A DNA stretch of 64,000 nucleotides from IMGVR_UViG_3300049215_000771:186001-250000; one strand, 5' to 3'; shown: positions 7,108 to 55,938, counted from the first letter of the stretch. Numbers and translations are program-made. Notes: generated by a model not told the origin, from the letters alone.

Positions 7108-7860
7108 ATGAGAACTTTCAGGCAGTATCATCAGTGGCGGGAAGCCTTCCTTGGCGCAGGTAATTCATACCATCCTGACGGAAACAGTGGTGGACAACCA
7201 CCACCAGACCGAACCTCCGAGTACATCCCGCCCCTGCCGCCTGGAGGCCCACCCCGCCCAGGACCGCATGGCACGATACAAGATGGCGATTTCCTCCGCA
7301 AGCTGTTGGCGATATTGACCAAAATAGATGCCTTCCGGGACGACAGAATTACTCCCAGCGGAGCCAGTGTGCGAGGCATGGCCGGCACACCTGATTATAT
7401 GTCCCCGGAGATGGGACAACGGACACAATCGCCCGGAGGTTTTGAAGAAGAAAACGAACACGATGACCTGGAATCTTTCCTGGTCAACGGGGCACGCATT
7501 TTCCCCGAAGTTGCAGCCGAGGCCCAGCAAGTCATGCGAGCCTGGTTGCAGTTTCGGAATTTGTTCCTTCCTGCCCTGCATAGTCGTTACACCCAACAGG
7601 AACAACAACAAAACTATCTCTACTACAAGGTCACACTCAGAAACTACAACAATGTGACCCCGTTATTGAAGGAATTGGATAAACTCATCATGGGCGAGAG
7701 CGGCCAGCACAACCCCGCTATCTCGACCAACTGGACCGCATTTATCCAGCAATGGCGGCGACTCGCCCCAAAACTGGCCGGGATGCTCAACCAGGCAATG
7801 GCAGAACACCCGAATCCATACCAGGCCGAGCCTATACAAATGACGCAAGACGTGGTATAA
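7108..7860 (+). CDS. putative virion/internal head protein
   Basis: CTAAATA-N5-ATG upstream; N-terminus MRTFRQYHQWRE. Confidence 0.6.
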   Translation: MRTFRQYHQWREAFLGAGNSYHPDGNSGGQPPPDRTSEYIPPLPPGGPPRPGPHGTIQDGDFLRKLLAILTKIDAFRDDRITPSGASVRGMAGTPDYMSPEMGQRTQSPGGFEEENEHDDLESFLVNGARIFPEVAAEAQQVMRAWLQFRNLFLPALHSRYTQQEQQQNYLYYKVTLRNYNNVTPLLKELDKLIMGESGQHNPAISTNWTAFIQQWRRLAPKLAGMLNQAMAEHPNPYQAEPIQMTQDVV

Positions 7861-7880
7861 TCCCCATCATCGGAGTGATT

Positions 7881-8273
7881 ATGGAAACGGTCAGCGATTT
7901 TCTCAGTGCCCATCGGGATGAAGTCAGCACCGCTTTGAATGAAGTGGGCGGCTGGCGTGGCTTGTTTGACCCTTACTGTGCCGAATGGCAGGAGGCTGAC
8001 CTTCGCCAGAAAGCCGGCGTGCTGCGTTTGCTGATGCAGCATCGCACATTCCCTCAACTTGTTGCTATCTTTCTCAACTCCGAGAGAAGGGAATACATCC
8101 GACAAGATGTGCCATGCGCTATCTTCAAGTTGATGGATCACCTGCCCGAAGCCAAGGAATTTTTCCTCAACGACCCGATTTGCGTCAACAGTGTGTACCA
8201 CGAGTGCCTGACGAGAAAACTCGATGCTGAAAGATGGACAGCACCAGCACGGCCATCAGATAACCACACTTGA
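7881..8273 (+). CDS. hypothetical protein
   Basis: GGAG SD. Confidence 0.65.
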   Translation: METVSDFLSAHRDEVSTALNEVGGWRGLFDPYCAEWQEADLRQKAGVLRLLMQHRTFPQLVAIFLNSERREYIRQDVPCAIFKLMDHLPEAKEFFLNDPICVNSVYHECLTRKLDAERWTAPARPSDNHT

Positions 8274-8511
8274 AGTTGAGAATGATGGGCTGATTCTCGT
8301 AGCCCTCCACTTCAGAACTGGTTGTTCTGTCCTTGGCAAAATGCTTCGCCCTGAAGATTCCGTGCCCGTAGAATTAGTCTTGGAGGATGCAGACCCCAAT
8401 CTTGCAACCGTTGTTTGCGGCGCTTGCAAGCAGAAATTGGGAAAATGCAAAGTAAAACAACAAAATGTTCAAATCGGTAGGAAGACTTCGGTACAGCCCG
8501 AAGCTGAATAA
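8224..8511 (+). CDS. hypothetical protein
   Basis: ORF, Cys-rich; start uncertain. Confidence 0.5.
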   Translation: MLKDGQHQHGHQITTLEVENDGLILVALHFRTGCSVLGKMLRPEDSVPVELVLEDADPNLATVVCGACKQKLGKCKVKQQNVQIGRKTSVQPEAE

Positions 8512-8911
8512 GGGCACCACGGATCGCCGGGATGGAGGTTCTACGAAGTGGTGGCTTGTTATCGACGTTAGCCCCGGCATCGGTCGCTATTACCGTGACT
8601 TGTATGCCATGTCCCGCTGGAACGTCGATACCCTCCAGCGACCCCTGTGGGAAGCGCACATCTCGGTCATTCGAGATGAGAAGCCAAAACCTGGATTCGA
8701 GCCATTGTGGAACAAATACAACGGCAAGAAGATCGAATTCCTTTATGATGGCTACAACGCAACAGGTGACGGCGTTTACGTTTGGCTGCCCGTCGTCTGC
8801 GAGGAAGCATTGAGGATTCGGGAAGAACTCGGCCTGCCCAAGCATCCGTACTTCCCCTTGCACCTGACATTCGGCAATGCTAAAGGACAAACGCAATCGC
8901 TGCCTGAATGA
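8465..8911 (+). CDS. 2H phosphoesterase superfamily protein
   Basis: two Hx(S/T)x motifs: AHISV and LHLTF. Confidence 0.7.
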   Translation: MFKSVGRLRYSPKLNKGTTDRRDGGSTKWWLVIDVSPGIGRYYRDLYAMSRWNVDTLQRPLWEAHISVIRDEKPKPGFEPLWNKYNGKKIEFLYDGYNATGDGVYVWLPVVCEEALRIREELGLPKHPYFPLHLTFGNAKGQTQSLPE

Positions 8912-9302
8912 ACATTGCAACAAACAGCGCAGATCAAACCATATGGTTTGTGCTTTCTGTTGGAATTTGTTGCCAAGAAGCTGGAGGGTTGCAGTACCAA
9001 ACCAATGCACCAGTTTTACCAGAAAGGAATGGGAAGATCGTATCATCCGATTCTTCCGACTGACTAGCTTCCCAATGCCCAAGGTGAAATGTTGGCCGGA
9101 CGCCGATCTCGACAACTACGACCTGGTTAAGTTCGAGATTAAGCTGATGCAACATTTGTACCCCGAACTTGAAGATGACGGCCCACCGTGGGACGGCATC
9201 GAACGCTGCGAATGGTTGAAGCAGCAAATCACTGAAAGGTTTCAGGCCGAGGCCGCTGAAGTCGTGCGAGTGGAGTTAAAACGTGGAACCACCCCTCAGT
9301 AA
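8877..9302 (+). CDS. hypothetical protein
   Basis: ORF, N-terminal Cys cluster. Confidence 0.55.
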   Translation: MLKDKRNRCLNEHCNKQRRSNHMVCAFCWNLLPRSWRVAVPNQCTSFTRKEWEDRIIRFFRLTSFPMPKVKCWPDADLDNYDLVKFEIKLMQHLYPELEDDGPPWDGIERCEWLKQQITERFQAEAAEVVRVELKRGTTPQ

Positions 9303-9474
9303 AGAAGAATTGTACCGTCAACACGCCGATGATCTGGAAAAGTTCAGGAAAATGACCGAGGCTGCTGTGAGGGGTTGGGTTCTACTTCGACGACGTTGGA
9401 CTTGAAGAAGGGAAGGAAATCCTTGAACATTATCGTTGGATAGACTCCGAGAGAGTCCGAGAGGAATTAACATC

Positions 9475-9879
9475 ATGAGTAACACCGTGACGGTTGGGAA
9501 GATTAAACTACAAGATCATCCCACCAACCCTGACTTGCAAATCGGCACCATCAACGGACATCAAGTCGTTGTCGGTCGCCACTACGATCCAGACACCTTG
9601 GGATTTTTTATCCCCGAAGGTGCTATCGTGCCTGACAAACTGGCCGACGAGATGTGGGTCCGTGGACGACTCGCCGGCAAACAACGCAACCGTGTCAAAA
9701 CCAGGGAACTCCACGGCGTTCACTCGGAAGGACTGTTCTACGGCTCATGCTACTGGACCAAACAAGGCAACCAGTGGATCGAAGTCAGCAGCCCTTCTTG
9801 GAACAACAACTGGAAGGAAGGGGATGATGTCGCCAAAGAAGTCGGCATCACCTTCGCTGAAGAATTGGTCGAAGCATGA
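9475..9879 (+). CDS. stand-alone OB-fold like the N-terminal domain of DRB0094-family RNA ligases
   Basis: HP.NPDL ... VVVG......GFFIPEGAIVP ... RVKT..L.GV.SEGL. Confidence 0.6.
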   Translation: MSNTVTVGKIKLQDHPTNPDLQIGTINGHQVVVGRHYDPDTLGFFIPEGAIVPDKLADEMWVRGRLAGKQRNRVKTRELHGVHSEGLFYGSCYWTKQGNQWIEVSSPSWNNNWKEGDDVAKEVGITFAEELVEA

Positions 9880-10070
9880 TCCAAGAACCCCAACTTCATT
9901 GGTGGGAGAAATTGTTTTATTTTACGCTATGGTGTTTCATCATTGCCATGATTATCCCCATAGCTTCCCTGGTGTTCTTTCTCACCGGCACCTGGTACGG
10001 CAGCGGTGTTTATGGGGCACTATACCATCGCAGCGAACTTGGTAAATGGCCACCGAAGGAGAAGAAATGA
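9876..10070 (+). CDS. small membrane protein
   Basis: hydrophobic, ATGA overlap. Confidence 0.55.
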   Translation: MIQEPQLHWWEKLFYFTLWCFIIAMIIPIASLVFFLTGTWYGSGVYGALYHRSELGKWPPKEKK

Positions 10071-10288
10071 ACTGTGCTTGCGGTCGCCCACTTCACTACA
10101 ACGATCCCAATGCCCAGGCTCAGGTCCAACGCCTCGTGGATCAACTTGGTGAATATACCACCATTACCGTCCCTGGCATCGGTAGCTACAAGGTCCAGCG
10201 CCACTATATCGGGCTGCATGGCGTTGTCGCTGCCGAACTCCCTAAACTCGCCCGCAAAGGTATTGTTGAGGAAATCCACAATGGATGA
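10067..10288 (+). CDS. hypothetical protein
   Basis: ATGA overlap. Confidence 0.6.
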   Translation: MNCACGRPLHYNDPNAQAQVQRLVDQLGEYTTITVPGIGSYKVQRHYIGLHGVVAAELPKLARKGIVEEIHNG

Positions 10289-10649
10289 CCCGAAAGCGTT
10301 TGTTGAAGATTTCATCAAGGCCAACTTCGACCTGACACCTGGCATGATCCTCGAAGTCCATGACACTGAGGAAATCAACAGCCTCGCCGCCACGGTCAAG
10401 AACCTCGACTACGACTACCAGGCCGAACAGTGGGTCCAGGACATCATGACCGATGAAGTCAATGGTGGGCCACGCAAATTCGCCCTCGCCAAGTTCATCC
10501 TGAAAGACGACCAAGGCATCCGGGCCGTCTGGAAGGTTCTGCCCAACATGGATGTCGCAATTGTCGAAAAATCACCCCGCTTTACCGGCGAGTGGGTGTT
10601 GAATTTACCATTCACGCCGAGACGGAAGGAACAGTACGATGGCGAATAG
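10281..10649 (+). CDS. hypothetical protein
   Basis: GAGG SD. Confidence 0.65.
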   Translation: MDDPKAFVEDFIKANFDLTPGMILEVHDTEEINSLAATVKNLDYDYQAEQWVQDIMTDEVNGGPRKFALAKFILKDDQGIRAVWKVLPNMDVAIVEKSPRFTGEWVLNLPFTPRRKEQYDGE

Positions 10650-11067
10650 CCTCATGGTCATCAAACCCTACCAGTGGGAAGGCATTTGGGTGTTTGATGA
10701 CGAAACCACCGGCCTCGTCAAAGAAGCCTTGGTCGCAGGGACCGACAAAATCCTTGAAGGACTTTGTAACTTCAACAACATCCCGATGGAGTCCGCCAAG
10801 AAGGGCTTCCGGCTCATCTTCTCCGAGACGCCGTTCCCCGGCTGGCAACTCCACGCCAAACACGACAAGTCCGACGTGGGCGATGGCGACCTGGGCAGCG
10901 ACCAGGTGTTTGGCAACTGGTACGAAGTCGTTGACATGCTCGACCACACCGGCAAGTCCCAGCAATACGTCAAGGGCATGAAGGGATGGCTGTGCCCCGC
11001 CCTGTTCAAATACTTCGACCACACGCCCAAAAACCTCTACGCCAAGGCCGAGGAAATCAAGGACTGA
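10639..11067 (+). CDS. DUF6717-like protein
   Basis: IKPY..EG.WVFDD...GL..E.LV.G.D ... WLCPAL.KYF...P.N.Y. Confidence 0.75.
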   Translation: MANSLMVIKPYQWEGIWVFDDETTGLVKEALVAGTDKILEGLCNFNNIPMESAKKGFRLIFSETPFPGWQLHAKHDKSDVGDGDLGSDQVFGNWYEVVDMLDHTGKSQQYVKGMKGWLCPALFKYFDHTPKNLYAKAEEIKD

Positions 11068-11080
11068 TAACACCAACAAA

Positions 11081-11117
11081 ACAACGCCTACAGCCGGCAT
11101 TCCTGCCGGCTGTTGTC
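11081..11117 (+). terminator. intrinsic terminator-like hairpin
   Basis: CAGCCGGCA-TTCC-TGCCGGCTG followed by T-rich bases. Confidence 0.55.
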
Positions 11118-11128
11118 ATTTATACGGT

Positions 11129-11344
11129 ATGAACAACCTCAAATATCGTGAGTGGGAAAATAAGAGATTCCGTTTCAACGACGGCACGTTCTACCACGAC
11201 CGCTTCAAGGATAACACAGGCACTATCCTCAAGATCGGACCAATACTTGCGCATTACCAGATGGATGACGATAAAACTGTGTACACCATGCCGCTGCAAA
11301 ACCTCGACAAAAAAATGGATGTGGTCACTTTAGTTCAGGATTGA
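11129..11344 (+). CDS. hypothetical protein
   Basis: ORF. Confidence 0.55.
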   Translation: MNNLKYREWENKRFRFNDGTFYHDRFKDNTGTILKIGPILAHYQMDDDKTVYTMPLQNLDKKMDVVTLVQD

Positions 11345-11373
11345 TTTACAAGCTAATCGCTCCGTGGTATAAT
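11345..11373 (+). promoter_or_regulatory. sigma70-type promoter, leaderless
   Basis: TTTACA-N17-TATAAT, ATG 5 nt downstream. Confidence 0.75.
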
Positions 11374-11378
11374 CCGGC

Positions 11379-11585
11379 ATGAAGTACATCATCACCGTGG
11401 AAATCACAAAGGACGACCGGCCTGTTAAACCCAAAGACCTGCGTGGGCAAATGGTCGCCAAGTTCCCCAGGGTCGCCCCAAAATTGTTCAAGAAAGCCAT
11501 TCGCCTTCTGTGCTGGCCGTTCGGAGCCAACATCAAAGTGGAATTCGTCGAAGAAGACGAAAAACCCAGGAAGAACAACAAGTGA
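11379..11585 (+). CDS. hypothetical protein
   Basis: directly after promoter. Confidence 0.65.
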   Translation: MKYIITVEITKDDRPVKPKDLRGQMVAKFPRVAPKLFKKAIRLLCWPFGANIKVEFVEEDEKPRKNNK

Positions 11586-11959
11586 CCATCGACGTGGATG
11601 CTCCTGAATACCAACTCGACCCTCCTCCACCACGATATTCCAAGTGGAAGGTCGGCTTGTTCTGTTGGTTTACGTTCTTGCTGTTGATTTGTTTCTTCTA
11701 TCCCTACGAGGATGGACAAATCAACTGGCTCGGCGTGGGGATCAATTCGTTGTTCATGCTGGTGTACGGACTGGAAATCTACAGAAGGCGAAAACAGGTC
11801 ATGCTCCTGGAACGCCTCCATCGACACTTTGAGGCGCTGAAACGCATTGTCAAAACACCTACAATGCGTTATGATGAGGAAACCAAGACATACTTCCTGA
11901 CCTGGCTGTTCAGCCTCACGCCGGAAGATGTTGACAAAATGATGATGAGGAAACAATGA
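11582..11959 (+). CDS. hypothetical membrane protein
   Basis: two TM-like segments. Confidence 0.6.
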   Translation: MTIDVDAPEYQLDPPPPRYSKWKVGLFCWFTFLLLICFFYPYEDGQINWLGVGINSLFMLVYGLEIYRRRKQVMLLERLHRHFEALKRIVKTPTMRYDEETKTYFLTWLFSLTPEDVDKMMMRKQ

Positions 11960-12381
11960 AAGAAACCATCGAACGCATTATGGATATTGTCTACCAGGAC
12001 AAGGCCCGCATTACTGGTCATATGGCCCAGGCACTTGCACTTACCATCAAGCCTATCCTGGAAGCACTCGGTAAACCCGAAGACGCCCCAGCAGTCTGCG
12101 AACAACTCGCCGAACAACTCACACCACTCGGCGAAGAAATCGGGCGGGAAGCATACGCCAAGTTCTACACGGATGAGCAACTGAATCGCCTTGCCGACTT
12201 CCACGAAGCAAACCCGTGGTATACCGGCACCCAAGGCGATGCCCAGGTGTGGATCACTGAACAGGTCGCTCAACGAAGCCGCCCGTTCGTCGAAGCGATC
12301 CTCAACAAATACATCGAGGACGACGATGAGCCTGCAACAGCAATCACCGACAACTCTCAAATTCCCGAAGCCCTTCAGTGA
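11956..12381 (+). CDS. DUF2059-like helical protein
   Basis: YAKFYTDEQL..LA.F pattern. Confidence 0.5.
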   Translation: MKETIERIMDIVYQDKARITGHMAQALALTIKPILEALGKPEDAPAVCEQLAEQLTPLGEEIGREAYAKFYTDEQLNRLADFHEANPWYTGTQGDAQVWITEQVAQRSRPFVEAILNKYIEDDDEPATAITDNSQIPEALQ

Positions 12382-13801: not shown

Positions 13802-13804
13802 ACC

Positions 13805-14119: not shown

Positions 14120-14293
14120 ATGTACGAAATAAGGAAAGAAAGCGCCGTCCTCTCCCAAGGACAAACTCCCGAAGAAGCCATCAGCAAACTCACTGGCCGG
14201 CACGAGAAAACTGAATTGTGGTTCCGGGGCCAATTCGTCGCTGAACTCGAACATACGGAAGAAAAAATCCACACGCATTGGGTGGGAGACTGA
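14120..14293 (+). CDS. small hypothetical protein (57 aa)
   Basis: fills gap; stop overlaps next ATG. Confidence 0.5.
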   Translation: MYEIRKESAVLSQGQTPEEAISKLTGRHEKTELWFRGQFVAELEHTEEKIHTHWVGD

Positions 14294-16807: not shown

Positions 16808-16823
16808 GAAGCTACATAAAGTC

Positions 16824-17555
16824 ATGAAGACTTTCTACGAATGGCTGCACGAAGCGAAATCAGCTAACATAGGACAAACTCCCGCCCAGCCTGCGCCCCA
16901 AGCAAAACCACCAGTAGCAAAACCATCAGTAGCAAAACCACAACCAATTAACCACGGTTATAACAAACCACAAGCCCCAGCCCCACAACCACAGCAACAA
17001 GCCCCAGCCCCAGCCCCAGCCCCACAAGCCCCAGCCCCAGCCCCAGCCCCACAACCACAGCAACAGCCCGCACAGCAGCCACAACAAGGGTCTGCGGGAA
17101 CCGCACCAGATGGCGAGCCGCTGGTGAAAACTCCCGATGGGAAAATCATCAGAAGTTCTGCTGTGTCCAATGCTATCTTCCAGCAATTTGATGAGTTGCT
17201 GAAAAAGAACGCTGATGGTTTCATCAAGAACAAAATAACCGATCCAATGCAACACCAGGGCTTCCAGAAACAAGTACAACAACTCATCAGCAAATGGAAC
17301 CTGCCGCCAGACCAGGCCAAACAAGTCCAAGATCAAATCTTCGGACCCCAAGGCTGGTACTACAAAGGACGTGGCGGACTCGGCGGAAATACCCTCGCCT
17401 TCATCCAACAATCCATCCAAGACCCTACAGCCTTCACAGGCGATAAAGGTGCAGCACAACGACAACAGCAGCAACAACAGCAAGTCCCCGTTGCCCAGGT
17501 AGCCCCACCCCAGCCTCAGAAAAAGTCCTGGATGAGTAGCTGGTTCGGCGGCTAA
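16824..17555 (+). CDS. Pro/Gln-rich putative internal head protein
   Basis: CTACATA-N5-ATG; N-terminus MKTFYEWLHE. Confidence 0.7.
   Translation: MKTFYEWLHEAKSANIGQTPAQPAPQAKPPVAKPSVAKPQPINHGYNKPQAPAPQPQQQAPAPAPAPQAPAPAPAPQPQQQPAQQPQQGSAGTAPDGEPLVKTPDGKIIRSSAVSNAIFQQFDELLKKNADGFIKNKITDPMQHQGFQKQVQQLISKWNLPPDQAKQVQDQIFGPQGWYYKGRGGLGGNTLAFIQQSIQDPTAFTGDKGAAQRQQQQQQQVPVAQVAPPQPQKKSWMSSWFGG
16973..17085 (+). repeat. coding tandem repeats (CCCCAG)n encoding AP/QP linker
   Basis: GCCCCAGCCCCA runs. Confidence 0.8.
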
Positions 17556-24040: not shown

Positions 24041-24070
24041 AAAATTAACTCGAAGTAAATATCTACCTGC

Positions 24071-24658
24071 ATGATCCAACTGCGGTTCAAATTGTGGCTC
24101 GAATTGTTCGATAGAAGCAGTGGCAAACCCCTCACCGGCACCTGGAAACCACCCCTCCAAAGCCCTCCTATCAACAGACAATACAAATATGTCTTCAACC
24201 TCGACTCCGATCCCACCAAAGACTGCCGGGGCCAACCTTGTTTTTGGGTCAACTTCTACGAAAATTACGACGGAGTATACACCGTCACCTTCGGTCATGC
24301 CGAAACCAAATTCCAGGACCGCTCCACAATCAATAAACAAATCCATCAACAAACAGGCACCGACCCAGGTATCGAAATGATGGGAACTGTCATGAGGGTC
24401 ATGGAGGAATTCGTCAACCAAAAACAACCTGTCGGCTTCTCCTGGACAGGCGTTAAGAAATCTACCCCAGGCGCTATCAACACCGACGCCAGAGCTAAAG
24501 TCTATGACCTGTGGGCCAGAAAAACCCTCGCAGGGAAATACACCAAATACCAAGGCATCTGGCTGCGCAATGATGTCTACGAGAAAGAAAGAACTAAACC
24601 CCCTACCCCACCCGACCACCTGACCCCTCTCGAATGGCCCGATGATGAAGAAATATAG
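24071..24658 (+). CDS. putative virion protein
   Basis: TAAATA upstream; N-terminus MIQLRFKLWLE. Confidence 0.6.
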   Translation: MIQLRFKLWLELFDRSSGKPLTGTWKPPLQSPPINRQYKYVFNLDSDPTKDCRGQPCFWVNFYENYDGVYTVTFGHAETKFQDRSTINKQIHQQTGTDPGIEMMGTVMRVMEEFVNQKQPVGFSWTGVKKSTPGAINTDARAKVYDLWARKTLAGKYTKYQGIWLRNDVYEKERTKPPTPPDHLTPLEWPDDEEI

Positions 24659-25864: not shown

Positions 25865-25928
25865 ATCACCACCAAAACACAATGCCAACATCCAACAACA
25901 AACAGAAACAAATTCACTACATAACCTC

Positions 25929-26279
25929 ATGCCCCTGCAATCGTTCACCACCTGGCTCACTGAAAACCAAAAACAACGTATCCAGTTCGCCGGCTGGTTC
26001 AAAGATGGTACTGTTATCGTCTACCTCAATGGCATCCGTCATGTCTATATCACCGACGCCATCTACCACGAACGCTGGAAAGCACTCAGTAAGCGTAATC
26101 CCATGCTCGTAATGTCCCAAATCGCTCAACTCGTCCGTGCCGGCCACGCCCAACAAACTGAACCACCATCCGTGTCCAGAAAACCTATCCAACCCCCTAA
26201 CCCAAAACCTGTCATCAAACAGCCTAGCTTGTTCGATAACGAGGACGATCAGGAAAACGACCACCAACACACCTTGTAG
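25929..26279 (+). CDS. putative virion protein
   Basis: CTACATA-N5-ATG; MPLQSFTTWLTE. Confidence 0.6.
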   Translation: MPLQSFTTWLTENQKQRIQFAGWFKDGTVIVYLNGIRHVYITDAIYHERWKALSKRNPMLVMSQIAQLVRAGHAQQTEPPSVSRKPIQPPNPKPVIKQPSLFDNEDDQENDHQHTL

Positions 26280-48637: not shown

Positions 48638-48721
48638 GGCATCCTCCTTACCCAAGGATACCAAAACCAAGACTAAATACAAGCAGTTCTAACACTGCTT
48701 TCAGCAGAAAGGAGTCTGCGC

Positions 48722-49129
48722 ATGAGATGTTTTGCGTTTGCCCTTGCGCTTCTCGTGGCTTTATGTCATGGATGCGCCAACGAAACCCCAACGCCCGTCA
48801 TGGCTCCAGAAGCCGTTGAATCTTTGGATGAGGTTAATGCGGTGCGTGCCAAGCGAGGGCTTCCTCCCTTCATCAAAGATGAAGGTTTGACGGAAGGCGC
48901 TTTGAAAATTGCTCCCTACCGAGCCGAGCGTTTGATCGCCGGCCACACCAGCAATGACTTCGCTTTCTTGCCCAAGGGCGTTGAAGCGTCAGCAGCAGGG
49001 TGTGCCGCCTGGACACCGGATTGGGGTTGGGGTGCTTGTTGTACCTATGATCGCTACAAGTACGCTGGTGCGGCCTGGGCGATGGGCCGGGATGGAAGGC
49101 GCTACATGCACCTATTTGTCAGGCGTTGA
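48722..49129 (+). CDS. planctomycete-type CAP-like lipoprotein
   Basis: lipobox CHGC; L.EVN..RA.RGL.PF..D..L...A. Confidence 0.65.
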   Translation: MRCFAFALALLVALCHGCANETPTPVMAPEAVESLDEVNAVRAKRGLPPFIKDEGLTEGALKIAPYRAERLIAGHTSNDFAFLPKGVEASAAGCAAWTPDWGWGACCTYDRYKYAGAAWAMGRDGRRYMHLFVRR

Positions 49130-49648
49130 TTCGTTGAGATAATGGTCAACCCTTGTCTCGGCGATGGGAAGATACTCGATGTCTTCCCTCCAGTCGTAAT
49201 CGCAGCCCTCGTATTTGAGGGGAATCTCCTCCGAGGGCTGCCCTTCCATATACACTGCCTCGTGCATGAAAGCCATCTCCCGGTCAATCCCCACGGTTTG
49301 CCAATTGTACAAATCCAATGCCGACACCTGGTCCCCCGGCTTGTATCTCACTCCCCTTGTCGCCCGGAGGAAGTCGTGCATTCCAGCTTTTTCTTCTGCT
49401 TCATTCATCCACATGGCACCATGCTCCGTGTCCGGCCAGCCCGTGTCCGATGAGTCATCTCGACGTTCGTACTCCTCATACAACTCACGGTAGTAAATTG
49501 TGCTGTAGGGGCGTCCGGCACTATCACGAAAATTGGTTTTGTTCGGCCCACAATAGTTGTAGGCGTTACGCTTGTCCTTGTCCCGTAGCTTCCACAACGC
49601 AGCTTGTTCCGGCTGCTGGAGCCATTCCTGGTAATCGTTCCAATTCAT
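49112..49648 (-). CDS. hypothetical protein (F(M/A)H paralogue family)
   Basis: EMAFMHEAVY ... RVDHYL. Confidence 0.65.
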   Translation of the reverse strand: MNWNDYQEWLQQPEQAALWKLRDKDKRNAYNYCGPNKTNFRDSAGRPYSTIYYRELYEEYERRDDSSDTGWPDTEHGAMWMNEAEEKAGMHDFLRATRGVRYKPGDQVSALDLYNWQTVGIDREMAFMHEAVYMEGQPSEEIPLKYEGCDYDWREDIEYLPIAETRVDHYLNESTPDK

Positions 49649-49976: not shown

Positions 49977-49981
49977 GAAAA

Positions 49982-51232
49982 TCACCAACCCCGCCCGCCT
50001 CTCGATACTAAGTTAGAAACGTAGACCGAAACTTTCGATAGGTCAACACTAGGCTCGAACTTGATCGACGTACCGTAATGATTGCCCCCAGGAACCATGT
50101 AAGTAAGCGATACATAAGTTTTTGTTTTCTTCACGTCAATCTTCGCCCCACTTTGCGCCGCCAACTTGCCCACCCCAGGTGCCTCCGATGTACCAAAATC
50201 TTTCCCAATGGCACCACTCCAGCCGGGTTCCCCAATGTTCCTAACTAACATCCGATAGGCTGGCAAAGTTTCAGCCCCACCCGTAACCAACAATTCCAAC
50301 AATTTTGCGAAACGACGTGGGCCGGCATTTCTACGGGCAGCTTTCTCGAACATAGAGAGGACGAGTTCAGGTCTTTCCGAATCTTCGTAGAGAGGGTTAG
50401 TGAGAATGTCCTTGAGTGCCTTGATGTTTTTACCTCCCAACAGGGCGTAGGATTTGCCGAGGCCGAAGCTGCGCACTTCGATCTGTGTCTCGGTGACGGC
50501 CTTGAGAGAGAAGCCCAGGGAGGAGCGGTCGGCCCCTGCTGCGGAGGAGCAAATGAGGCGCAGGTCGGCGGTGTCGGATTTGAGTTTACCGGCTCCAGCG
50601 CCCCAGCCTGCCCCACCCAGGAACTCGATGGAGTCGATGATGCAGGCCCGAATCAAGGCCGAAGATTTCTGGAAGATCAACTCGCCCATACCTCCACTGC
50701 CACCGCCCGCATGAATCCTGATGAATTCACAAACCAACTTGCCGAGATTGGGGTCTTTCAACTTGGTGGCAATCTCCCCTTCCAGGCGAGTTTTTTCCGC
50801 CGTGGCCGAGGCCAGATTCATGGTGCCGACAGGACTCAATTTGTGGGTGTTCAGAAGATACAAAAACACTTCAATCTCGAACAGGAGGCCCATCTCCTTG
50901 CCCACGACGGAAGGCAGAGATTTCTTGCCTGCATCCATCGCCTTCTCAAACGACGCCTTCTCCGCAGGCTTCCAGTGTCCGATCTGGCCAGCAATGGCTC
51001 CCGTCGCTGCCGGTCCCTTCCAACCCTTCTGTGTGATTTCTACCAAATCTCCGGGATGGACGACGCTGGCCGCAAGACGCATGGGAGTAGGCGCTGCCAT
51101 CTCGTCGGCGATCTTGGGGAAGGTAATACTCACATACCCCTCTCCTGTCGAGAAACGTACCCCTTGTTTGAGCCGGGTCACAAATGGCATTAGCTCCGCA
51201 TCAACACCAACAAATTCTTTGAATTGAAACAT
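49982..51232 (-). CDS. putative virion protein
   Basis: CTAAATA-N5-ATG; MFQFKEFV. Confidence 0.65.
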   Translation of the reverse strand: MFQFKEFVGVDAELMPFVTRLKQGVRFSTGEGYVSITFPKIADEMAAPTPMRLAASVVHPGDLVEITQKGWKGPAATGAIAGQIGHWKPAEKASFEKAMDAGKKSLPSVVGKEMGLLFEIEVFLYLLNTHKLSPVGTMNLASATAEKTRLEGEIATKLKDPNLGKLVCEFIRIHAGGGSGGMGELIFQKSSALIRACIIDSIEFLGGAGWGAGAGKLKSDTADLRLICSSAAGADRSSLGFSLKAVTETQIEVRSFGLGKSYALLGGKNIKALKDILTNPLYEDSERPELVLSMFEKAARRNAGPRRFAKLLELLVTGGAETLPAYRMLVRNIGEPGWSGAIGKDFGTSEAPGVGKLAAQSGAKIDVKKTKTYVSLTYMVPGGNHYGTSIKFEPSVDLSKVSVYVSNLVSRGGRGW

Positions 51233-51240
51233 GCAGATAT

Positions 51241-51690
51241 TTAGCACAAGCACGAAATCTTCTTGGAGTTCTTCAGGTAATCATCCACCCGGTTATCCAT
51301 GTTGCCACGGGCCACAATGTTCCGGTCGGCCTCAACCTCGTCCCACCAGTTCTCCCGATACTCCGGGAACGATAAATCAACATCTTCTACGGGTTCATCC
51401 TCCGGGAAGATCGCCTCGTGCGCAAACATCAAGTCGGGAGGCAACTCGCAATACTTTGGATCGTATGCCAACGACTTGCGGATCGGTTCTTCATTTTTTA
51501 CGTCCGGCCCCACAATCCCAAAGTAAGAAGGACAATCTTTCCATAACTTCTTCTGCTCAGGTTCGTTCAACCAGCGAGCAAACTCCTCGTCACTCATTAC
51601 TTCAAGCCAGTGACGAAACTCCGCTATGTTCTCAGGATTCAATGACTGCGTGACACACATATTGAACATGCCAGGAACACAAAATGCCAT
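51241..51690 (-). CDS. hypothetical protein (F(M/A)H paralogue family)
   Basis: CELPPDLMFAHEAIF ... RVDDYL. Confidence 0.65.
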   Translation of the reverse strand: MAFCVPGMFNMCVTQSLNPENIAEFRHWLEVMSDEEFARWLNEPEQKKLWKDCPSYFGIVGPDVKNEEPIRKSLAYDPKYCELPPDLMFAHEAIFPEDEPVEDVDLSFPEYRENWWDEVEADRNIVARGNMDNRVDDYLKNSKKISCLC

Positions 51691-51711
51691 AACTACCTCC
51701 TACATAATCAC

Positions 51712-52167
51712 ATGAACTTCAAACATTGGCTACACACCGAAGAAGCCCAACCTATCCAGCCCGCACAAGTTCAACAAATTCTTTCTGCGCATCGTGGACC
51801 CCTCAATACAGGGAATATCAGAACCGACCTCCTGGTAAGTGCCGCCAACCGAGGCGAACACATTATGTTCGATCAAGACTTCCCAATCACAAACATCGGA
51901 CGGCGCATCCAAGGGTATGATATGAATCATGTCATGACAATGATAAACACCATCTTCAAAACCATCGGCCTGCCCGCCATCCAAGATCGTACCCAAATCC
52001 AACCCCAAACAATCCAACCTCATATCGAACAAATCAAAGAAGCCCTGCCGCCCCTCATCGTGTCCCTCATGCCCGATGAATCGTACCACCTGGATGATGG
52101 CAACCATCGCCTGGGTGTCGCTAGAACTCTTGGCCTCCAAACCGTCAAAGCCTTCATCATTCAATAA
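51712..52167 (+). CDS. ParB/sulfiredoxin-like domain protein, putative virion protein
   Basis: PP.IV......Y...DGNHR..A...G...V.A; CTACATA-N5-ATG; MNFKHWLHTEE. Confidence 0.7.
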   Translation: MNFKHWLHTEEAQPIQPAQVQQILSAHRGPLNTGNIRTDLLVSAANRGEHIMFDQDFPITNIGRRIQGYDMNHVMTMINTIFKTIGLPAIQDRTQIQPQTIQPHIEQIKEALPPLIVSLMPDESYHLDDGNHRLGVARTLGLQTVKAFIIQ

Positions 52168-52621
52168 GATCAATCAACCACGGATCGTCAATACTACGGT
52201 ATTTATGCTGTTTGGAAAGATTTTTACCAGGTTCCAGTACAGCTTCGATTTGAACGAGTTTGTAGGAGGAGCCGACCTGGAGGATGCCCTGGTCGTCCAC
52301 TCGTCCGTTGCCGACGCCGACCATTTTGAAGCCAACGCCGTTGGGGTTATAGTTGAGGACGGACTGAAGGGTTTGGCCTGCGGGGGTGGAGAGGATTTTA
52401 ACTTCGGCCATGAGTTTATCGTCATCCATCCACAATTTTTCGATGGAGTGGGAGACATTGGTGAAGTGGATGATGGAATCCGTAACGGGGCCGAGTTCGC
52501 ACAACATGCCCCGGCCATCAATGATAGGTTTGAGCCGATCCACCTGTGCCTGGAGAAGTTCCTTGCTATAAACACGATTGGTCGGCGTTACCTTATCAGC
52601 GACACAAACAGTAACGATCAT
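52157..52621 (-). CDS. T4 gp21-like prohead protease paralogue, probably inactive
   Basis: N.RVY....L ... EL ... VSH.I..L ... KIL.TP.G; catalytic SSRG replaced by KMVG; ends YRSIDDPW. Confidence 0.7.
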   Translation of the reverse strand: MIVTVCVADKVTPTNRVYSKELLQAQVDRLKPIIDGRGMLCELGPVTDSIIHFTNVSHSIEKLWMDDDKLMAEVKILSTPAGQTLQSVLNYNPNGVGFKMVGVGNGRVDDQGILQVGSSYKLVQIEAVLEPGKNLSKQHKYRSIDDPWLIDLIE

Positions 52622-52630
52622 ACGCACTCC

Positions 52631-53038
52631 TTATGTACTGTCACGCAGATAGCGTTTTACTTTCTCCGTGGCGGGCAATCTATCATCGTACTGGCGAAGG
52701 TAATCGTTGTCATCCAGGACCGGGATGTAATACTCATCATTTTTGCCCCAACGTGCCCCTTCTTCCTTGGCAGAAAATGTCGTGTCCCACGAGGAATTGT
52801 CCCCGGAATCGAACACGGCATTGTGCATGAACAAGGTTTCGGCGGCGAAGGGCAACTCACCTGTTTGCAGGGACTTCAGCAGCGCCTCCTTCACTTCCAG
52901 ACAGTACGCATCCGTGTCGAACATCCGTTGGTCCTCCCGAATCCAGGTTTTGGGTCGGCCCGGCTTGTTGTCCATCTGGTATGGAGGTTTGCTGTAGTCC
53001 GACTCCTTCACTTCCTGGATGTATTTCTCTTCCGCCAT
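52631..53038 (-). CDS. hypothetical protein (F(M/A)H paralogue family)
   Basis: ELPFAAETLFMHNAVF ... KVKRYL. Confidence 0.6.
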   Translation of the reverse strand: MAEEKYIQEVKESDYSKPPYQMDNKPGRPKTWIREDQRMFDTDAYCLEVKEALLKSLQTGELPFAAETLFMHNAVFDSGDNSSWDTTFSAKEEGARWGKNDEYYIPVLDDNDYLRQYDDRLPATEKVKRYLRDST

Positions 53039-53669
53039 CTTCCCCTCCTAACATCACCCCAATTTCTTCTGGCGGCAACATGGTAACAATGGTAGCAATC
53101 TGGCCCAAGTCCAATGGCTCGCCCGGCTCTTCTTCCGTCCCCAAACTGTCGTAGTAGGCACGAGCCGCCGCACACGAAGCATACAACTCCGGTTCGTTCA
53201 AACCTACACAAGCACAAGCCGCATGACCCGGCCCGACATAATCCAAAAACATCTGCTCCAACAACTCCTCCGCTAACTGCTGCGCCCGCTCCTGACTCCG
53301 ATCCCGGCCCCGCAACCACCCCAATCCCCACTCGGAGAACATCTGGTTGGTCACAGTGTTCAAGGCGCAAACAATTCCAAAGGCTTGTCGCTGTGCCAAG
53401 GTCGGAACAACAACTTCTACCTCCTGAAGCAACTTCATCTCCTTGGAAACAAACCGATAATCGTATTTCAACTTGTCGGCCCCAAGTTCGGCCAGCCAAA
53501 CACGGGGATTCTTGTACTGGTCCGTGCCCGGATTCATCAGCAGGGCAACCAAAGGGTGGTCATAACAAAGAAACCAGTAGTTTGGATTCTCCTCCGTGAA
53601 AGAAGTCCCCACCGCCCACTGGCGACCGAGCCAGTCCTTGCCGTCGCTATTCGTTGTGAAGTAGTACAT
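52857..53669 (-). CDS. conserved phage hypothetical protein
   Basis: HPL.A...NP ... Q...F.I.CA ... W...WL.G.DRS; 3' end overlaps next gene. Confidence 0.6.
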   Translation of the reverse strand: MYYFTTNSDGKDWLGRQWAVGTSFTEENPNYWFLCYDHPLVALLMNPGTDQYKNPRVWLAELGADKLKYDYRFVSKEMKLLQEVEVVVPTLAQRQAFGIVCALNTVTNQMFSEWGLGWLRGRDRSQERAQQLAEELLEQMFLDYVGPGHAACACVGLNEPELYASCAAARAYYDSLGTEEEPGEPLDLGQIATIVTMLPPEEIGVMLGGEDGGREIHPGSEGVGLQQTSIPDGQQAGPTQNLDSGGPTDVRHGCVLSGSEGGAAEVPANR

Positions 53670-53689
53670 ATCGCATTATACATACCTGC

Positions 53690-54337
53690 ATGAAAAAATA
53701 TCTTGCCTCCATCTTGTTTGTCGCCGCTCTCCTGGCCCTTATCATCGGTCGTGCCTTCATCGACACCACCCACCCCGACGCCTACGAAAATCAAGGCTTT
53801 GAATTCATCGCCCAACCCGACAACATCACCTGCGGCCCCACCAGCACCACCATGCTGCTCAAATACTACGGCAAAGATGTTACCATCGCCCAGGTCGAGA
53901 AAGAAACCCGCACCAAATGGTTTCACTGGAAAGGAGAAGACATCGGTATGACCGCCCCGGAATATGTAGAAATCGCCCTCCGTCGCTTTGGCGTCCCCGC
54001 CAAAATGCAACGAGGTAGTTTCAACAACCTCAAACATTATGTTTCCCAGGGCCGTCCCGTCATCGTCAACGTCCGCTCCGGGCAAACTACCTGGCATTAC
54101 GTCGTTGTCATCGGCTACACTAACGATCAAGTTATCTTGGCTGATCCCGGCGATGGCGCTCGGATCACCATCTCCGCTGAGAATTTCCTTGGTTGTTGGT
54201 CGTTCCAGACAGATATGGATGGAACTGTTTGCGGGCATTCTGATCCGCTGTGGGGGCGAGTCGATCCACTCAAAGATTTGCTGTGGGCTGGTGAAGTGTA
54301 CCCCTACACCATGATCGTACCGGAAAGGAAGAAATGA
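53690..54337 (+). CDS. C39-like cysteine peptidase, membrane anchored
   Basis: Q.....CGPTS..MLL.YYG; HYVVV.GY; L.DP. Confidence 0.8.
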   Translation: MKKYLASILFVAALLALIIGRAFIDTTHPDAYENQGFEFIAQPDNITCGPTSTTMLLKYYGKDVTIAQVEKETRTKWFHWKGEDIGMTAPEYVEIALRRFGVPAKMQRGSFNNLKHYVSQGRPVIVNVRSGQTTWHYVVVIGYTNDQVILADPGDGARITISAENFLGCWSFQTDMDGTVCGHSDPLWGRVDPLKDLLWAGEVYPYTMIVPERKK

Positions 54338-54352
54338 CCACTATATACCAGC

Positions 54353-55228
54353 ATGAGGAAAGAATGGATTCTTATCCTGGTTCTGGTTCTCGGTATTGGA
54401 TTCGCCTACCAGCACAAGATGAAGCAAAGGCAAACCCAAGTACCGCCCGCCCAGGTTCCGCCTGTACCGACACTGCCAGTCCAGCCCCCAACAAACCCTA
54501 CACCCCCACAACCACCCAGCCGCCCGCCTGTCGTTGTAGACATCATCAACTGGCCCGCCGTGCGCCAGGTCAGTCCTGATGGTATTGGCAGCGTCCTGGC
54601 CGATATAGACAGCCATATGCCTGCGGGCCATCAATATCGGGCTGCCAACAAGATTACCTGGGCACACGAAACCACGCACGGTATCAACGCCAATATCCGA
54701 AACAAACACTTCCAAAGTGGCCGGAAAGTCAACGCTTTCTACGTCCTCCAGAACCGAGCCATCGTGGTGGAGGAACCCAAAACCACCATCGCTGCCGTTG
54801 CCAACAATGTGCCGCAGTCCTGGAAGGGAACTTGCTACCAACTCTACTTGGTTCAGCAAAGGAGTGGCTGGAACAATGAACCTCTCTACCTGTGTGATGA
54901 ATGGGTTGCGTACACAAATGGGGCCGCTTGTAGGAAAGATTTGAACATGGAGGACGGGGCCAGTGAGATGGAATTTACTTGCGAGTTCACGGGCTATGTG
55001 CTGTCCCTGACTTATACCATCAAGCAAAATTGTCCGAATTACGACGACAAGCAGTTCAAGGCGTTCGTGATGTGGAGTGTAGAAAGGACAATGCAGATAT
55101 ACAACAACGAAAGTGGGGCTAATACCCGCCTGACAGCTATCCGTACAGCCCCGGATGGCGAGACTATTAGACAATTCGCCCGTTCCTATTTCGGTACGGA
55201 TTGGTGTAAGGAAGTATTGGGATTCTAG
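54353..55228 (+). CDS. membrane-anchored HExxH metalloprotein
   Basis: TM segment, Pro linker, WAHETTHG. Confidence 0.65.
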   Translation: MRKEWILILVLVLGIGFAYQHKMKQRQTQVPPAQVPPVPTLPVQPPTNPTPPQPPSRPPVVVDIINWPAVRQVSPDGIGSVLADIDSHMPAGHQYRAANKITWAHETTHGINANIRNKHFQSGRKVNAFYVLQNRAIVVEEPKTTIAAVANNVPQSWKGTCYQLYLVQQRSGWNNEPLYLCDEWVAYTNGAACRKDLNMEDGASEMEFTCEFTGYVLSLTYTIKQNCPNYDDKQFKAFVMWSVERTMQIYNNESGANTRLTAIRTAPDGETIRQFARSYFGTDWCKEVLGF

Positions 55229-55938
55229 GCAGTACGGCGTAGAAGTCGATTGGCGTAACTGTCCATATCTTCCGAGCTACGCTGGCGTGGTGTGGAAGCG
55301 TAGTTGAACACATCATCAGCGTCGTTCCAGCGGCTTAACTGATCTTGCCGGTCCTTGGTGACGCTGGCCCGCTTGTTGTTCATAGCTCGTTGATGATCGT
55401 CTACTTGTCCCCGCATCATATTGGCGTGGCTTTGTCCGAAGCGTTGAACGTCTTTACGGAACGAATCTTTACGGACCAGCTTGCTACCCATTTGGGCGTA
55501 GGGTTGTTTCGATTGGCGGTTGACTACGGATACGACAAGTCGCATTAGCGAGTCTGAGGTAAGCTGACCCCTGCTGGCGGTATTGCCTTGCATAATCACT
55601 GCGAATTCATCCCAAACCTGAAAGAGTCTTTGGCAATCCAGGTGTCCGGGGTTGCGTTCGAGGATGAATTTACCGATGGCCCCGGCAACCAGTTTCATAA
55701 GTTGGGGGATGTTGTCCTTGATTTGGCTCCAGAACTCGTTGTCTCCACGGTTGCTGATGAAGGATCGGTCGCCGGGGAGGGATACGGATGCGCCGTCGCC
55801 TTCAGGATGGAAGACGAGGAAGTAGCCGAATTTGGTTTTGAATTGGGGGCTGTGGGCTGTGATAGCTCCACCCTGATCTTGGAGGGTGATGGAGTTGTCA
55901 GTCATTCTCTCAGCGATTTCGAGCCATAAACTAAACAT
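55225..55938 (-). CDS. putative virion protein
   Basis: CTAAATA-N4-ATG; MFSLWLEIAE. Confidence 0.6.
   Translation of the reverse strand: MFSLWLEIAERMTDNSITLQDQGGAITAHSPQFKTKFGYFLVFHPEGDGASVSLPGDRSFISNRGDNEFWSQIKDNIPQLMKLVAGAIGKFILERNPGHLDCQRLFQVWDEFAVIMQGNTASRGQLTSDSLMRLVVSVVNRQSKQPYAQMGSKLVRKDSFRKDVQRFGQSHANMMRGQVDDHQRAMNNKRASVTKDRQDQLSRWNDADDVFNYASTPRQRSSEDMDSYANRLLRRTA

What the first reader, a model, noticed from the sequence alone, without database searches (positions are those of the whole stretch)
7108..55938. T4 capsid-targeting-sequence-like N-termini on the late leaderless genes
Seven of the genes with the late box begin with a motif like the T4 internal-protein CTS (IPII/IPIII MKTYQEFIAE, cleaved after E by gp21): MKTFYEWLHE (16824), MRTFRQYHQWRE (7108), MNFKHWLHTEE (51712), MPLQSFTTWLTE (25929), MFSLWLEIAE (55938-), MIQLRFKLWLE (24071), MFQFKEFV (51232-). 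Their bodies are unrelated (ParB-like, Pro/Gln-rich, unknown). They are candidate packaged and injected effectors.
Basis: partly seen in the sequence, partly recalled or inferred. Interest (0 to 1): 0.7.

Follow-up and report, generated by a model that had tools for sequence, protein, structure and literature searches.

The report
Capsid-targeting tags on megaphage late genes
A 533-kb uncultured phage with a T4-type head puts a T4-like "pack me into the capsid" peptide on about 40 unrelated proteins, mostly on genes whose late promoter touches the start codon, so it probably injects a large protein kit with its DNA; packaging itself is untested.

Summary
All seven N-termini are at the stated coordinates. 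Genome-wide (532,729 bp; window = 186,001-250,000) about 40 proteins begin M-x(0-7)-F-x-x-[W/F/Y]-[L/V/M]-x(1-3)-E. The motif sits on 23 of 52 ORFs whose ATG lies 5 nt after a TAnATA box, against 44 of 7,366 other ORFs (p 4e-35). The same holds in a 595-kb sister phage and in 80 related contigs.

The conserved positions are those that mutagenesis showed to matter in the T4 IPIII capsid targeting sequence: residues 4 and 7 for targeting, 8 and 10 for cleavage.

The genome encodes:
- a T4 gp21-type prohead protease with an intact catalytic triad
- a gp23-type capsid protein and a gp20-type portal
- a scaffold candidate rich in [L/I]xE
- a gp55-like late sigma factor

The box has the geometry of a T4-family late promoter, which puts +1 on the A of ATG.

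The protein bodies are unrelated, basic, and joined to the tag by flexible linkers. Orthologues occur with and without the tag. Bodies include NUDIX, dTMP kinase, C39-like peptidase, Acb1-like, and ParB/Srx-like proteins.

Packaging, cleavage, injection and late timing remain inferred. Verdict: a new variant of the T4 CTS system, confidence about 0.6.

The parts
7096..7860 (+). Box CTAAATAA (7096-7103), 4 nt, then a 250-aa gene beginning MRTFRQYHQWRE. Pro/Gly-rich linker; body unknown.
16812..17555 (+). Box CTACATAA, 4 nt, then a 243-aa gene beginning MKTFYEWLHE. This is the closest match to T4 IPII/IPIII (MKTYQEFIAE). Gln/Pro/Ala-rich, mature pI 9.8.
24056..24658 (+). TAAATAT with an 8-nt spacer, then a 195-aa gene beginning MIQLRFKLWLE. 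Weaker box geometry.
25917..26279 (+). Box CTACATAA, 4 nt, then a 116-aa gene beginning MPLQSFTTWLTE. The start is supported by coding potential.
49982..51244 (-). Box CTAAATAT (51237-51244), 4 nt, then a 416-aa gene beginning MFQFKEFVGVDAE. About 21 of 25 homologues from huge-phage contigs keep F.EW[LV]...E.
51700..52167 (+). Box CTACATAA, 4 nt, then a 151-aa gene beginning MNFKHWLHTEE. ParB/sulfiredoxin-fold body with a DGNHR motif. Residues 1-10 are outside the fold (pLDDT below 50). F3 and W6 are invariant in 7 homologues.
55225..55949 (-). Box CTAAATAT (55942-55949), 3 nt, then a 237-aa gene beginning MFSLWLEIAE. Body unknown, mature pI 9.6.
52157..52639 (-). A 154-aa truncated paralogue of the prohead protease. 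It lacks the catalytic His and Ser. It has its own box 10 nt upstream plus a Shine-Dalgarno site. Possibly a non-cleaving member of the head-core machinery.
53678..55228 (+). Two box-leaderless genes without the tag (53690-54337 and 54353-55228). Both have N-terminal membrane or signal segments. The first has weak endolysin-family hits. They show that the box and leaderless layout do not require the tag.

Best explanation
The N-terminal peptide is a capsid targeting sequence of the T4 kind.

Proposed steps:
1. A gp55-like late sigma factor reads the -10-only box gCTAnATA. On most of these genes the box sits so that transcription starts on the A of the ATG, giving a leaderless mRNA.
2. The protein emerges with a short amphipathic tag, F-x-x-[W/F/Y]-[L/V] followed by Glu, usually tethered to its body by a flexible linker.
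3. The two aromatic residues dock the protein onto the scaffolding core while the prohead assembles.
4. The gp21-type protease then cuts after the Glu and frees the mature, mostly basic protein inside the head.
5. The protein leaves with the DNA at the next infection.

Box plus tag is a small portable cassette, so very different genes have become cargo, and the cargo set turns over quickly between sister phages.

Shown here: the motif, its statistics, its modularity, the head-gene context and the promoter geometry. Inferred: docking, cleavage, packaging, injection and timing.
For: Match to the T4 tag:
- T4 IPII and IPIII begin MKTYQEFIAE, and IPI begins MKTFKEFTS...ITE.
- In IPIII, residues 4 and 7 carry targeting and residues 8 and 10 carry processing (PMC9026906).
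- In 37 members aligned on the first aromatic: F 36/37; W/F/Y at +3 in 37/37; L/V/M/F at +4 in 36/37; Glu is the commonest residue at +5 and +8 and second commonest at +6.

Statistics:
- Focal genome 23/52 against 44/7,366, p 4e-35. Sister phage LR756511 26/90 against 49/5,417, p 4e-29.
- 80 related IMG/VR loci: 34/109 against 101/9,134.

Head machinery in the same genome:
- Peptidase_S77 at 99.6 bits with the His/Ser/Asp triad aligned to T4 gp21 (triad per PMC5694885).
- Gp23 at 289 bits. Portal, protease and capsid PHROG families.
- The 299-aa protein between protease and capsid gene is Glu/Ala/Lys/Leu-rich. Its [LI]xE density is 4.0 per 100 aa, rank 7 of 574. T4 gp22 has 5.95.

Protein-level selection: all five Leu codons seen are used at the conserved Leu. 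The tag starts at residues 2-8, so it is not fixed in the mRNA.

Modularity:
- Orthologues of three families occur with or without the tag, and the tag ends where the conserved body begins.
- A small protein next to the head operon keeps MKTF..[FY][LIV]..E at 29% body identity.
- Residues 1-10 of the 51712 protein are unstructured while the rest has pLDDT 86-95.

Cargo properties:
- Mature parts are basic: median pI 8.6 against 6.0, p 6e-6.
- The next 30 residues are enriched in P/Q/A/G/S/T, p 9e-6.

Promoter:
- The box occupies the -13 to -6 frame of the T4 late box, as in the Aeh1 variant with (a/g)C at -13/-12 (PMC2988020).
- A 179-aa region-2-only sigma factor matches the PHROG 'late sigma transcription factor'.

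Outside support:
- A 187-aa family starting MKTFKEYLxE matches the 'virion structural' and 'internal head protein' PHROGs.
- Its homologue in the cultured phage PA5oct is a virion protein confirmed by mass spectrometry (MS), and PA5oct also has an S77 protease.
Against: - There is no virion, proteomic or transcription-start data for this phage. RNA runs were too sparse to use.
- 12 of 37 members lack a [LIVMF]xE site near the tag. One conserved family has ..QSE instead.
- Some cargo are ordinary nucleotide-metabolism enzymes, such as dTMP kinase and a HAD phosphatase. Packaging these is not obviously useful.
- The box also precedes RNR genes, a gp46-like gene and a gp41-like helicase gene, so it may not be strictly late.
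- T4 gp61.1, a small ORF in an early region, also begins MKTFKEFIKE. I know of no evidence that it is a head protein (my own knowledge, not checked here).
- No gp22, gp33 or gp45 homologue was detected by phmmer.
- The cultured 469-kb phage Phosso, a distant relative, has no such expansion.
Confidence: 0.6

Rival explanations
1. The tag is a docking or regulatory peptide for some partner other than the prohead core, such as a chaperone, a timed-degradation signal or another phage assembly. The likeness to the T4 CTS is then convergence of short amphipathic helices.
For: No direct link to the capsid was shown. Several cargo are metabolic enzymes. T4 gp61.1 carries the same N-terminus and lies in an early region. 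The cleavage-type [LIVMF]xE site is missing in a third of members.
Against: The identity with T4 covers exactly the four functionally mapped positions. The genome has the matching protease family and head genes. Homologous tagged proteins are 'internal head' or MS-verified virion proteins elsewhere. The basic mature parts fit DNA-associated internal proteins.
Confidence: 0.2
2. The conserved N-terminus has no function of its own. It hitch-hikes because a short promoter-plus-start cassette spreads by recombination in front of new genes.
For: Box and tag travel together. Orthologues gain and lose the tag. The cargo set turns over quickly: only 10 of 37 are shared with a sister phage at 81.5% capsid-protein identity.
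Against: The DNA of the tag is not conserved, since synonymous Leu codons are all used and the tag offset varies. The peptide is kept in orthologues at 29-57% identity and in a phage with 42% G+C against 53% here. Members with a leader and Shine-Dalgarno site keep the tag without the abutting box.
Confidence: 0.1
3. The motif is a requirement of leaderless translation, or an initial-transcribed-sequence signal read at the RNA or DNA level.
For: There is a strong association with promoters that abut the ATG.
Against: About half of the box-leaderless genes lack it, including membrane or lysis-type proteins and a 2,048-aa protein. Leadered genes have it. Codons vary synonymously, and the distance of the motif from the ATG varies by 18 nt.
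Confidence: 0.04
4. It is a chance or compositional artefact of short N-terminal patterns.
For: The pattern is short and degenerate. About 0.6% of arbitrary ATG-ORFs match it.
Against: P-values of 1e-25 to 1e-35 in the focal genome, replicated in a sister genome of different G+C and in 1 Mb of related contigs.
Confidence: 0.01

Closest known systems
Capsid targeting sequence of T4 internal proteins IPI, IPII, IPIII (Mullaney & Black 1996, as reviewed in PMC9026906 and PMC3012670)
   Same: An N-terminal 10-19-residue tag. Aromatic residues at positions 4 and 7, an aliphatic residue at 8, Glu at 10. Unrelated, mostly basic cargo bodies. A gp21-family protease in the same genome. The cargo set varies between relatives.
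   Different: About 40 tagged genes here instead of a handful. Many have Glu two residues further on (F..WL.L.E). Cargo include recognisable enzymes. Most genes are predicted to be leaderless, whereas the T4 ip genes have Shine-Dalgarno leaders. The phage is only distantly T4-like: capsid protein 28% identical, and no detectable gp22, gp33 or gp45.
T4 Alt and other gp21-processed head proteins
   Same: An enzyme cargo that is packaged, trimmed by gp21 after Glu, and injected to act at once on the host.
   Different: The Alt N-terminus (MELITELFDE) does not carry the F..[WFY][LV] pattern. Here one uniform tag serves many cargo.
Long propeptides of ejection proteins in phiKZ, 201phi2-1 and SPN3US (PMC5694885)
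   Same: Giant phages with a gp21-related protease, many inner-head proteins, cleavage after Glu, and an inactive protease paralogue.
   Different: Those propeptides are about 100 residues long, with S/A/G-x-E sites and paralogous bodies. Here the tag has the short T4 format and the bodies are unrelated.
T4-family late promoter, Aeh1-type variant (PMC2988020)
   Same: An 8-bp box alone with no -35 element. (g)C at -13/-12 followed by TAnATA. A gp55-like region-2-only sigma factor is encoded.
   Different: Position -9 is free (A, C, T or G). On about 45 genes the box is placed so that +1 falls on the start codon. gp33 and gp45 homologues were not found.
PA5oct EST35_0202 / marine 187-aa family (phrog_14802, phrog_2667)
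   Same: An N-terminus of MK[TS]F..Y[LY]..[ED] on a virion protein in phages with an S77 protease. In metagenomic members the CTAAATA box lies 5 nt before the ATG.
   Different: It is a single conserved structural family, not an expanded set of diverse cargo. No homologue was detected in this genome.

Membership tests
T4-type capsid targeting sequence (CTS) | Short peptide at the extreme N-terminus (10-19 residues in T4) | tested here: met
   The first aromatic residue is at residues 2-8 and the Glu follows 5-9 residues later, in 37 proteins.
T4-type capsid targeting sequence (CTS) | Targeting determinants: aromatic residues at the positions of IPIII Tyr4 and Phe7 | tested here: met
   F in 36/37 and W/F/Y three residues later in 37/37. 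Roles of the positions are taken from PMC9026906.
T4-type capsid targeting sequence (CTS) | Processing determinants: aliphatic residue at position 8 and Glu at position 10 ([L/I]-x-E) | tested here: inconclusive
   L/V/M/F at +4 in 36/37. Glu at +6 in 8 members and at +8 in 17. [LIVMF]xE lies nearby in 25/37 and is absent in 12.
T4-type capsid targeting sequence (CTS) | gp21-family prohead protease in the same genome | tested here: met
   PF03420 at 99.6 bits; phrog_207 at E 9e-49; 35% identity to T4 gp21 with His, Ser and Asp aligned.
T4-type capsid targeting sequence (CTS) | Scaffolding core to dock on (gp22-type) | tested here: inconclusive
   No sequence match to gp22. The 299-aa gene between the protease and capsid genes is coiled-coil-like in composition and ranks 7/574 in [LI]xE density.
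T4-type capsid targeting sequence (CTS) | One tag on unrelated cargo bodies | tested here: met
   No blastp similarity among the 37 bodies. Eight different Pfam families were found.
T4-type capsid targeting sequence (CTS) | Made late, while proheads assemble | tested here: inconclusive
   T4-late-like box and a gp55-like sigma factor. The box precedes sheath, head-operon and endolysin-like genes, but also RNR and gp46-like genes. RNA data were too thin.
T4-type capsid targeting sequence (CTS) | Protein found inside virions, N-terminus removed after Glu, delivered to the host | not testable with these tools
   The phage is uncultured. The only proxy is that PA5oct proteins with similar N-termini are virion proteins confirmed by mass spectrometry.
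T4-family late promoter | -10-only box at -13 to -6, read by a gp55-type sigma factor with gp33 and the sliding clamp | tested here: inconclusive
   Box consensus, geometry and absence of a -35 element fit. A gp55-like sigma factor is present. gp33 and gp45 were not detected. No start sites were mapped.

The most novel reading that the evidence does not exclude
A clade of 0.5-0.6-Mb phages uses a minimal cassette of late box, ATG and a 10-residue tag to turn almost any gene into capsid cargo. It loads roughly 40 different proteins, about ten times the T4 repertoire. These include enzyme classes known from counter-defence: an Acb1-like 2H phosphodiesterase, SAM-lyase-like proteins, NUDIX, a CCA-adding-type nucleotidyltransferase, a papain-like peptidase and a ParB/Srx-like protein. 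On this reading a ready-made enzyme kit enters the cell with the DNA before any phage gene is expressed.
Probability: 0.35. Interest if true: 0.8.

Novelty: new variant of a known kind. Interest (0 to 1): 0.66.

Why it matters
- Function prediction. If the tag works as in T4, it is a sequence-only marker for injected proteins in uncultured huge phages, a class that at present can be found only by virion proteomics. That would assign a place of action (inside the capsid, then the first seconds of infection) to dozens of unknown proteins per genome.
- Counter-defence. It would point to pre-packaged counter-defence enzymes, and would help explain what huge capsids carry besides DNA.
- Evolution. 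It would show that the T4 CTS logic is ancient and portable across gp21-protease phages.
- Engineering. It would offer new tag and protease pairs for loading foreign proteins into phage heads.
- Transcription. The coupling to promoters that abut the start codon is also a clean case of systematic leaderless late genes in a T4-related lineage.

Tried and rejected
- **Complex prediction.** Prohead protease with residues 1-30 of the 16824 protein gave no verdict (score 0.00, partner pLDDT below 40). It counts neither for nor against.
- **Transcript ends.** Moss metatranscriptome runs hold the phage only as isolated contigs of about 150 nt at depth 2-4. One contig crosses the 55938 start and another ends 21 nt inside the gene. 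Nothing can be read from this.
- **ESM Atlas.** Look-ups for the 7108 and 55938 proteins gave no usable lead.
- **Pfam and PHROG scans.** Six of the seven window proteins gave nothing above threshold. The 51712 protein gave only ParB_N at E 0.013, which the fold search then supported. A relaxed PHROG scan of all 37 members did not bring up a shared 'internal head protein' family. The tag is too short for HMMER's filters.
- **T4 homologue search.** phmmer with T4 gp55, gp33-region genes, gp45, gp22, gp67, gp68, Alt and Inh found nothing. gp55-likeness came only from Pfam region 2 and a PHROG profile.
- **Cultured models.**
  - Phosso (469 kb, capsid protein about 40% identical in the matched parts) has 0 box-plus-tag genes.
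  - PA5oct has only 2 clear tagged genes. Both are MS-verified virion proteins, but that is too few for statistics.
- **Paralogy.** Rejected as the cause of the shared N-terminus.
- **Nearby motifs left out.** Window 49112-49648 (-) and 51241-51690 (-) contain ..EWLQQPEQ.. and ..RWLNEPEQ... These look like a separate paralogous motif that is not at a boxed start, so I did not include them. The ORF at 3279 (MNFLKWLVRRE) has negative coding potential and was dropped.


Full report
**Context.** The window is bases 186,001-250,000 of a 532,729-bp virus record. The source is a moss metagenome. The nearest GenBank record is an unannotated 595-kb 'uncultured phage', LR756511.1, with 81.5% capsid-protein identity. 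IMG/VR holds at least 353 contigs that encode a related capsid protein.

**The observation.**
- Six are preceded by [C]TA[A/C]ATA[A/T], then 3-4 nt, then ATG.
- The seventh (24071) has TAAATAT with an 8-nt spacer.
- The start at 25929 lies inside a longer open frame, but coding potential changes sign exactly there.

**Size of the phenomenon.**
- CTAnATA occurs only 85 times on both strands. By my arithmetic, base composition predicts about 200.
- Of those 85, 21 end exactly 5 nt before a called start, and most of the rest lie within 100 nt upstream of a gene.
- With my own rough gene calls (787 genes), the pattern M-x(0-6)-F-x-x-[WFY]-[LIVMF]-x(0-5)-E is found in 21 of 43 genes whose ATG follows the box. 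It is found in 5 of 743 other genes (p 6e-25) and after 0.4% of internal Met residues.
- Without gene calls the table is 23/52 against 44/7,366 (p 4e-35).
- I list 37 members and saw a few more afterwards. At least eight have a leader with a Shine-Dalgarno site instead of an abutting box.

**Replication in relatives.**
- In LR756511.1 (42% G+C against 53% here) the table is 26/90 against 49/5,417 (p 4e-29).
- In 1 Mb flanking the capsid gene of 80 related contigs it is 34/109 against 101/9,134.
- Only 10 of the 37 focal proteins have a homologue in the sister phage, and none of the window's seven do. The tag and promoter are conserved while the cargo set turns over.

**What the tag looks like.**
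- Aligned on the first aromatic residue: F 36/37; R/K next; E/Q next; W/F/Y 37/37; L/V/M/F 36/37. Glu is then the commonest residue at +5 and +8 and the second commonest at +6.
- T4 IPII and IPIII begin MKTYQEFIAE, and IPI begins MKTFKEFTS...ITE (read from the T4 record).
- According to the review of the Mullaney and Black experiments, IPIII residues 4 and 7 carry capsid targeting, and residues 8 and 10 carry processing (PMC9026906). Those are the four conserved positions here.
- Conservation is at the protein level. The conserved Leu uses CTG, CTT, TTG, CTC and CTA. The tag begins anywhere from residue 2 to 8.

**Head machinery.**
- The genome has a Peptidase_S77 (gp21-family) protease at 337220-337906, scoring 99.6 bits. 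It is 35% identical to T4 gp21, with the His, Ser and Asp of the triad aligned (triad per PMC5694885).
- It has a Gp23-type capsid protein at 338843-340279 and a gp20-type portal at 330903-333470.
- gp17, gp18, gp25, gp15, gp41, gp46 and gp47 homologues are also present.
- The 299-aa protein between the protease and capsid genes has no family match. It is Glu/Ala/Lys/Leu-rich and ranks 7 of 574 for [L/I]xE density (4.0 per 100 aa; T4 gp22 has 5.95). This fits a scaffold that the same protease degrades.

**Modularity.**
- The bodies after residue 18 share no blastp similarity.
- Three families show members with and without the tag: the one containing genome 359046, the 2H/Acb1-like family, and the C39-like peptidase family. 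In each, the tag ends exactly where the conserved body starts.
- A 114-aa protein transcribed divergently from the head operon (335083) keeps MKTF..[FY][LIV]..E in 14 relatives, although the body falls to 29% identity.
- Homologues of the window's 416-aa and 151-aa proteins keep the tag. F3 and W6 are invariant in the latter.
- An AlphaFold model of the 151-aa protein is confident from residue 11 on (mean pLDDT 86.8). Residues 1-10 are unstructured. The fold matches sulfiredoxin and ParB N-domains.
- Mature parts are basic: median pI 8.6 against 6.0, p 6e-6. The 30 residues after the tag are enriched in P/Q/A/G/S/T, p 9e-6.

**Cargo.** These Pfam matches are all above the curated cut-offs:

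| Family | Genome start |
|---|---|
| NUDIX | 157757 |
| NIF/HAD phosphatase | 347012 |
| thymidylate kinase | 347048 |
| Peptidase_C39-like | 352827 |
| DUF3293 (SAM-lyase-like just under cut-off) | 459469 |
| PolyA_pol/CCA-type nucleotidyltransferase | 258047 |
| 2',5'-RNA-ligase/Acb1-like | 315569 |

The window's seven proteins are unknown, apart from the ParB/Srx-like one.

**Promoter.**
- The box consensus is g-C-T-A-n-A-T-A. There is an A-rich patch 15-20 nt upstream and usually a C just before the ATG.
- T4 late promoters are an 8-bp box at -13 to -6 with no -35 element. Phage Aeh1 has (a/g)C at -13/-12 (PMC2988020).
- In that frame, five nucleotides after the final A put +1 on the A of the ATG.
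- A 179-aa sigma factor with region 2 only (413426-413965) matches the PHROG 'late sigma transcription factor'.
- The box precedes the sheath gene, the head operon, a 2,048-aa protein and an endolysin-like gene. It also precedes the RNR genes, a gp46-like gene and a gp41-like gene. 'Late' is therefore likely but not shown.

**Wider distribution.**
- I scanned IMG/VR for the box, 5 nt and ATG-AAR-ACN-TTY. They fall into at least 14 families at 33-60% G+C.
- The largest family, starting MKTFKEYLxESKK, matches the 'virion structural protein' and 'internal head protein' PHROGs.
- That family has a homologue in the cultured jumbo phage PA5oct, EST35_0202 (MKSFRDYYD...), annotated as a structural protein by ESI-MS/MS.
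- PA5oct has an S77 protease. Its other clearly tagged gene, EST35_0227, is also an MS-verified virion protein.

**Weighing.**
- The CTS reading explains the conserved positions, the modular gain and loss, the linkers, the basic bodies, the head-gene context and the promoter class.
- An RNA-level signal is excluded by codon and offset variation, and by tag-less leaderless genes.
- Paralogy and chance are excluded.
- A different docking function or a hitch-hiking cassette cannot be excluded without experiments.
- Points against: irregular cleavage sites, housekeeping-type cargo, a not strictly late box, and T4 gp61.1, which carries the same N-terminus in an early region.
- I put the CTS mechanism at about 0.6.

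**Novelty.** The T4 CTS and the variable internal-protein sets of T-even phages are known (PMC3012670, PMC9026906). Giant phiKZ-like phages use long propeptides (PMC5694885). I found no paper in the library that describes a T4-format tag expanded to about 40 diverse cargo in huge phages, or its coupling to promoters that abut the start codon. I rate it a new variant of a known kind.

Noticed in passing
window 52157-52621 (-): A 154-aa truncated paralogue of the prohead protease (phrog_207 at E 2e-15). The catalytic His is replaced by Pro and Ser-Ser by Lys-Met, so it is presumably inactive, like the 'cryptic protease' gp117 of SPN3US. It lies among tagged genes.
   Followed up: partly
window about 26,800-47,300 (+): An island of 60% G+C containing small same-strand genes. 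Nearly every gene is preceded by cATAGGGAGa 6-9 nt before the ATG. At least 8 copies share a roughly 50-nt unit of a hairpin plus cttccttgcgag..aacgacaaccaTAGGGAGa. There are no box or tag genes inside. It may be a separate module with its own T7-like promoter and Shine-Dalgarno cassettes.
   Followed up: partly
genome 58177-58380, 453543-453695, 517826-517984, 351378-351485 (outside the window): Four short ORFs (88-149 aa) each match a different piece of Pfam Gp23 above cut-off, far from the full capsid gene. They look like scattered capsid-gene fragments of unknown meaning.
   Followed up: no
T4 record NC_000866, 18966-19130 (-), gene 61.1: The 54-aa T4 gp61.1 begins MKTFKEFIKEDMVAGDSGGNPE. 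This resembles the small tagged megaphage proteins, for example genome 352580 (MKTFLEWLKLREEGGLFGNPGTP). It may be an unrecognised small CTS-bearing family shared with T4.
   Followed up: no
genome 352580, 329185, 368915, 404558, 62474 and related contigs: A family of 56-126-aa proteins that are little more than the tag plus ..RE.GG..G.P. There are several copies per genome. They could be internal peptides.
   Followed up: no
genome 335258-337207 (+), just upstream of the protease: A 649-aa protein with no family match begins MKRKLISFDVFKKIEE, a near-tag (F..F, then I-E-E). It is a candidate large prohead-core protein.
   Followed up: no
genome 443069 (-), 515740 (+), 439975 (-), 440949 (-): The gp46-like and gp41-like genes have the box abutting the ATG, and both RNR subunit genes have it 32-42 nt upstream. 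The box is therefore not restricted to virion genes.
   Followed up: partly
window 53690-54337 (+): A box-leaderless 215-aa gene with an N-terminal membrane or signal segment and weak endolysin-family hits. It is followed by a second leaderless membrane-protein gene (54353-55228). This may be a lysis cassette.
   Followed up: no
whole record: The identical 416-aa and 151-aa proteins are on record from a 673,178-bp contig, while the IMG/VR record is 532,729 bp and labelled 'provirus'. The phage may be larger than the record, or the trimming may be an artefact.
   Followed up: no
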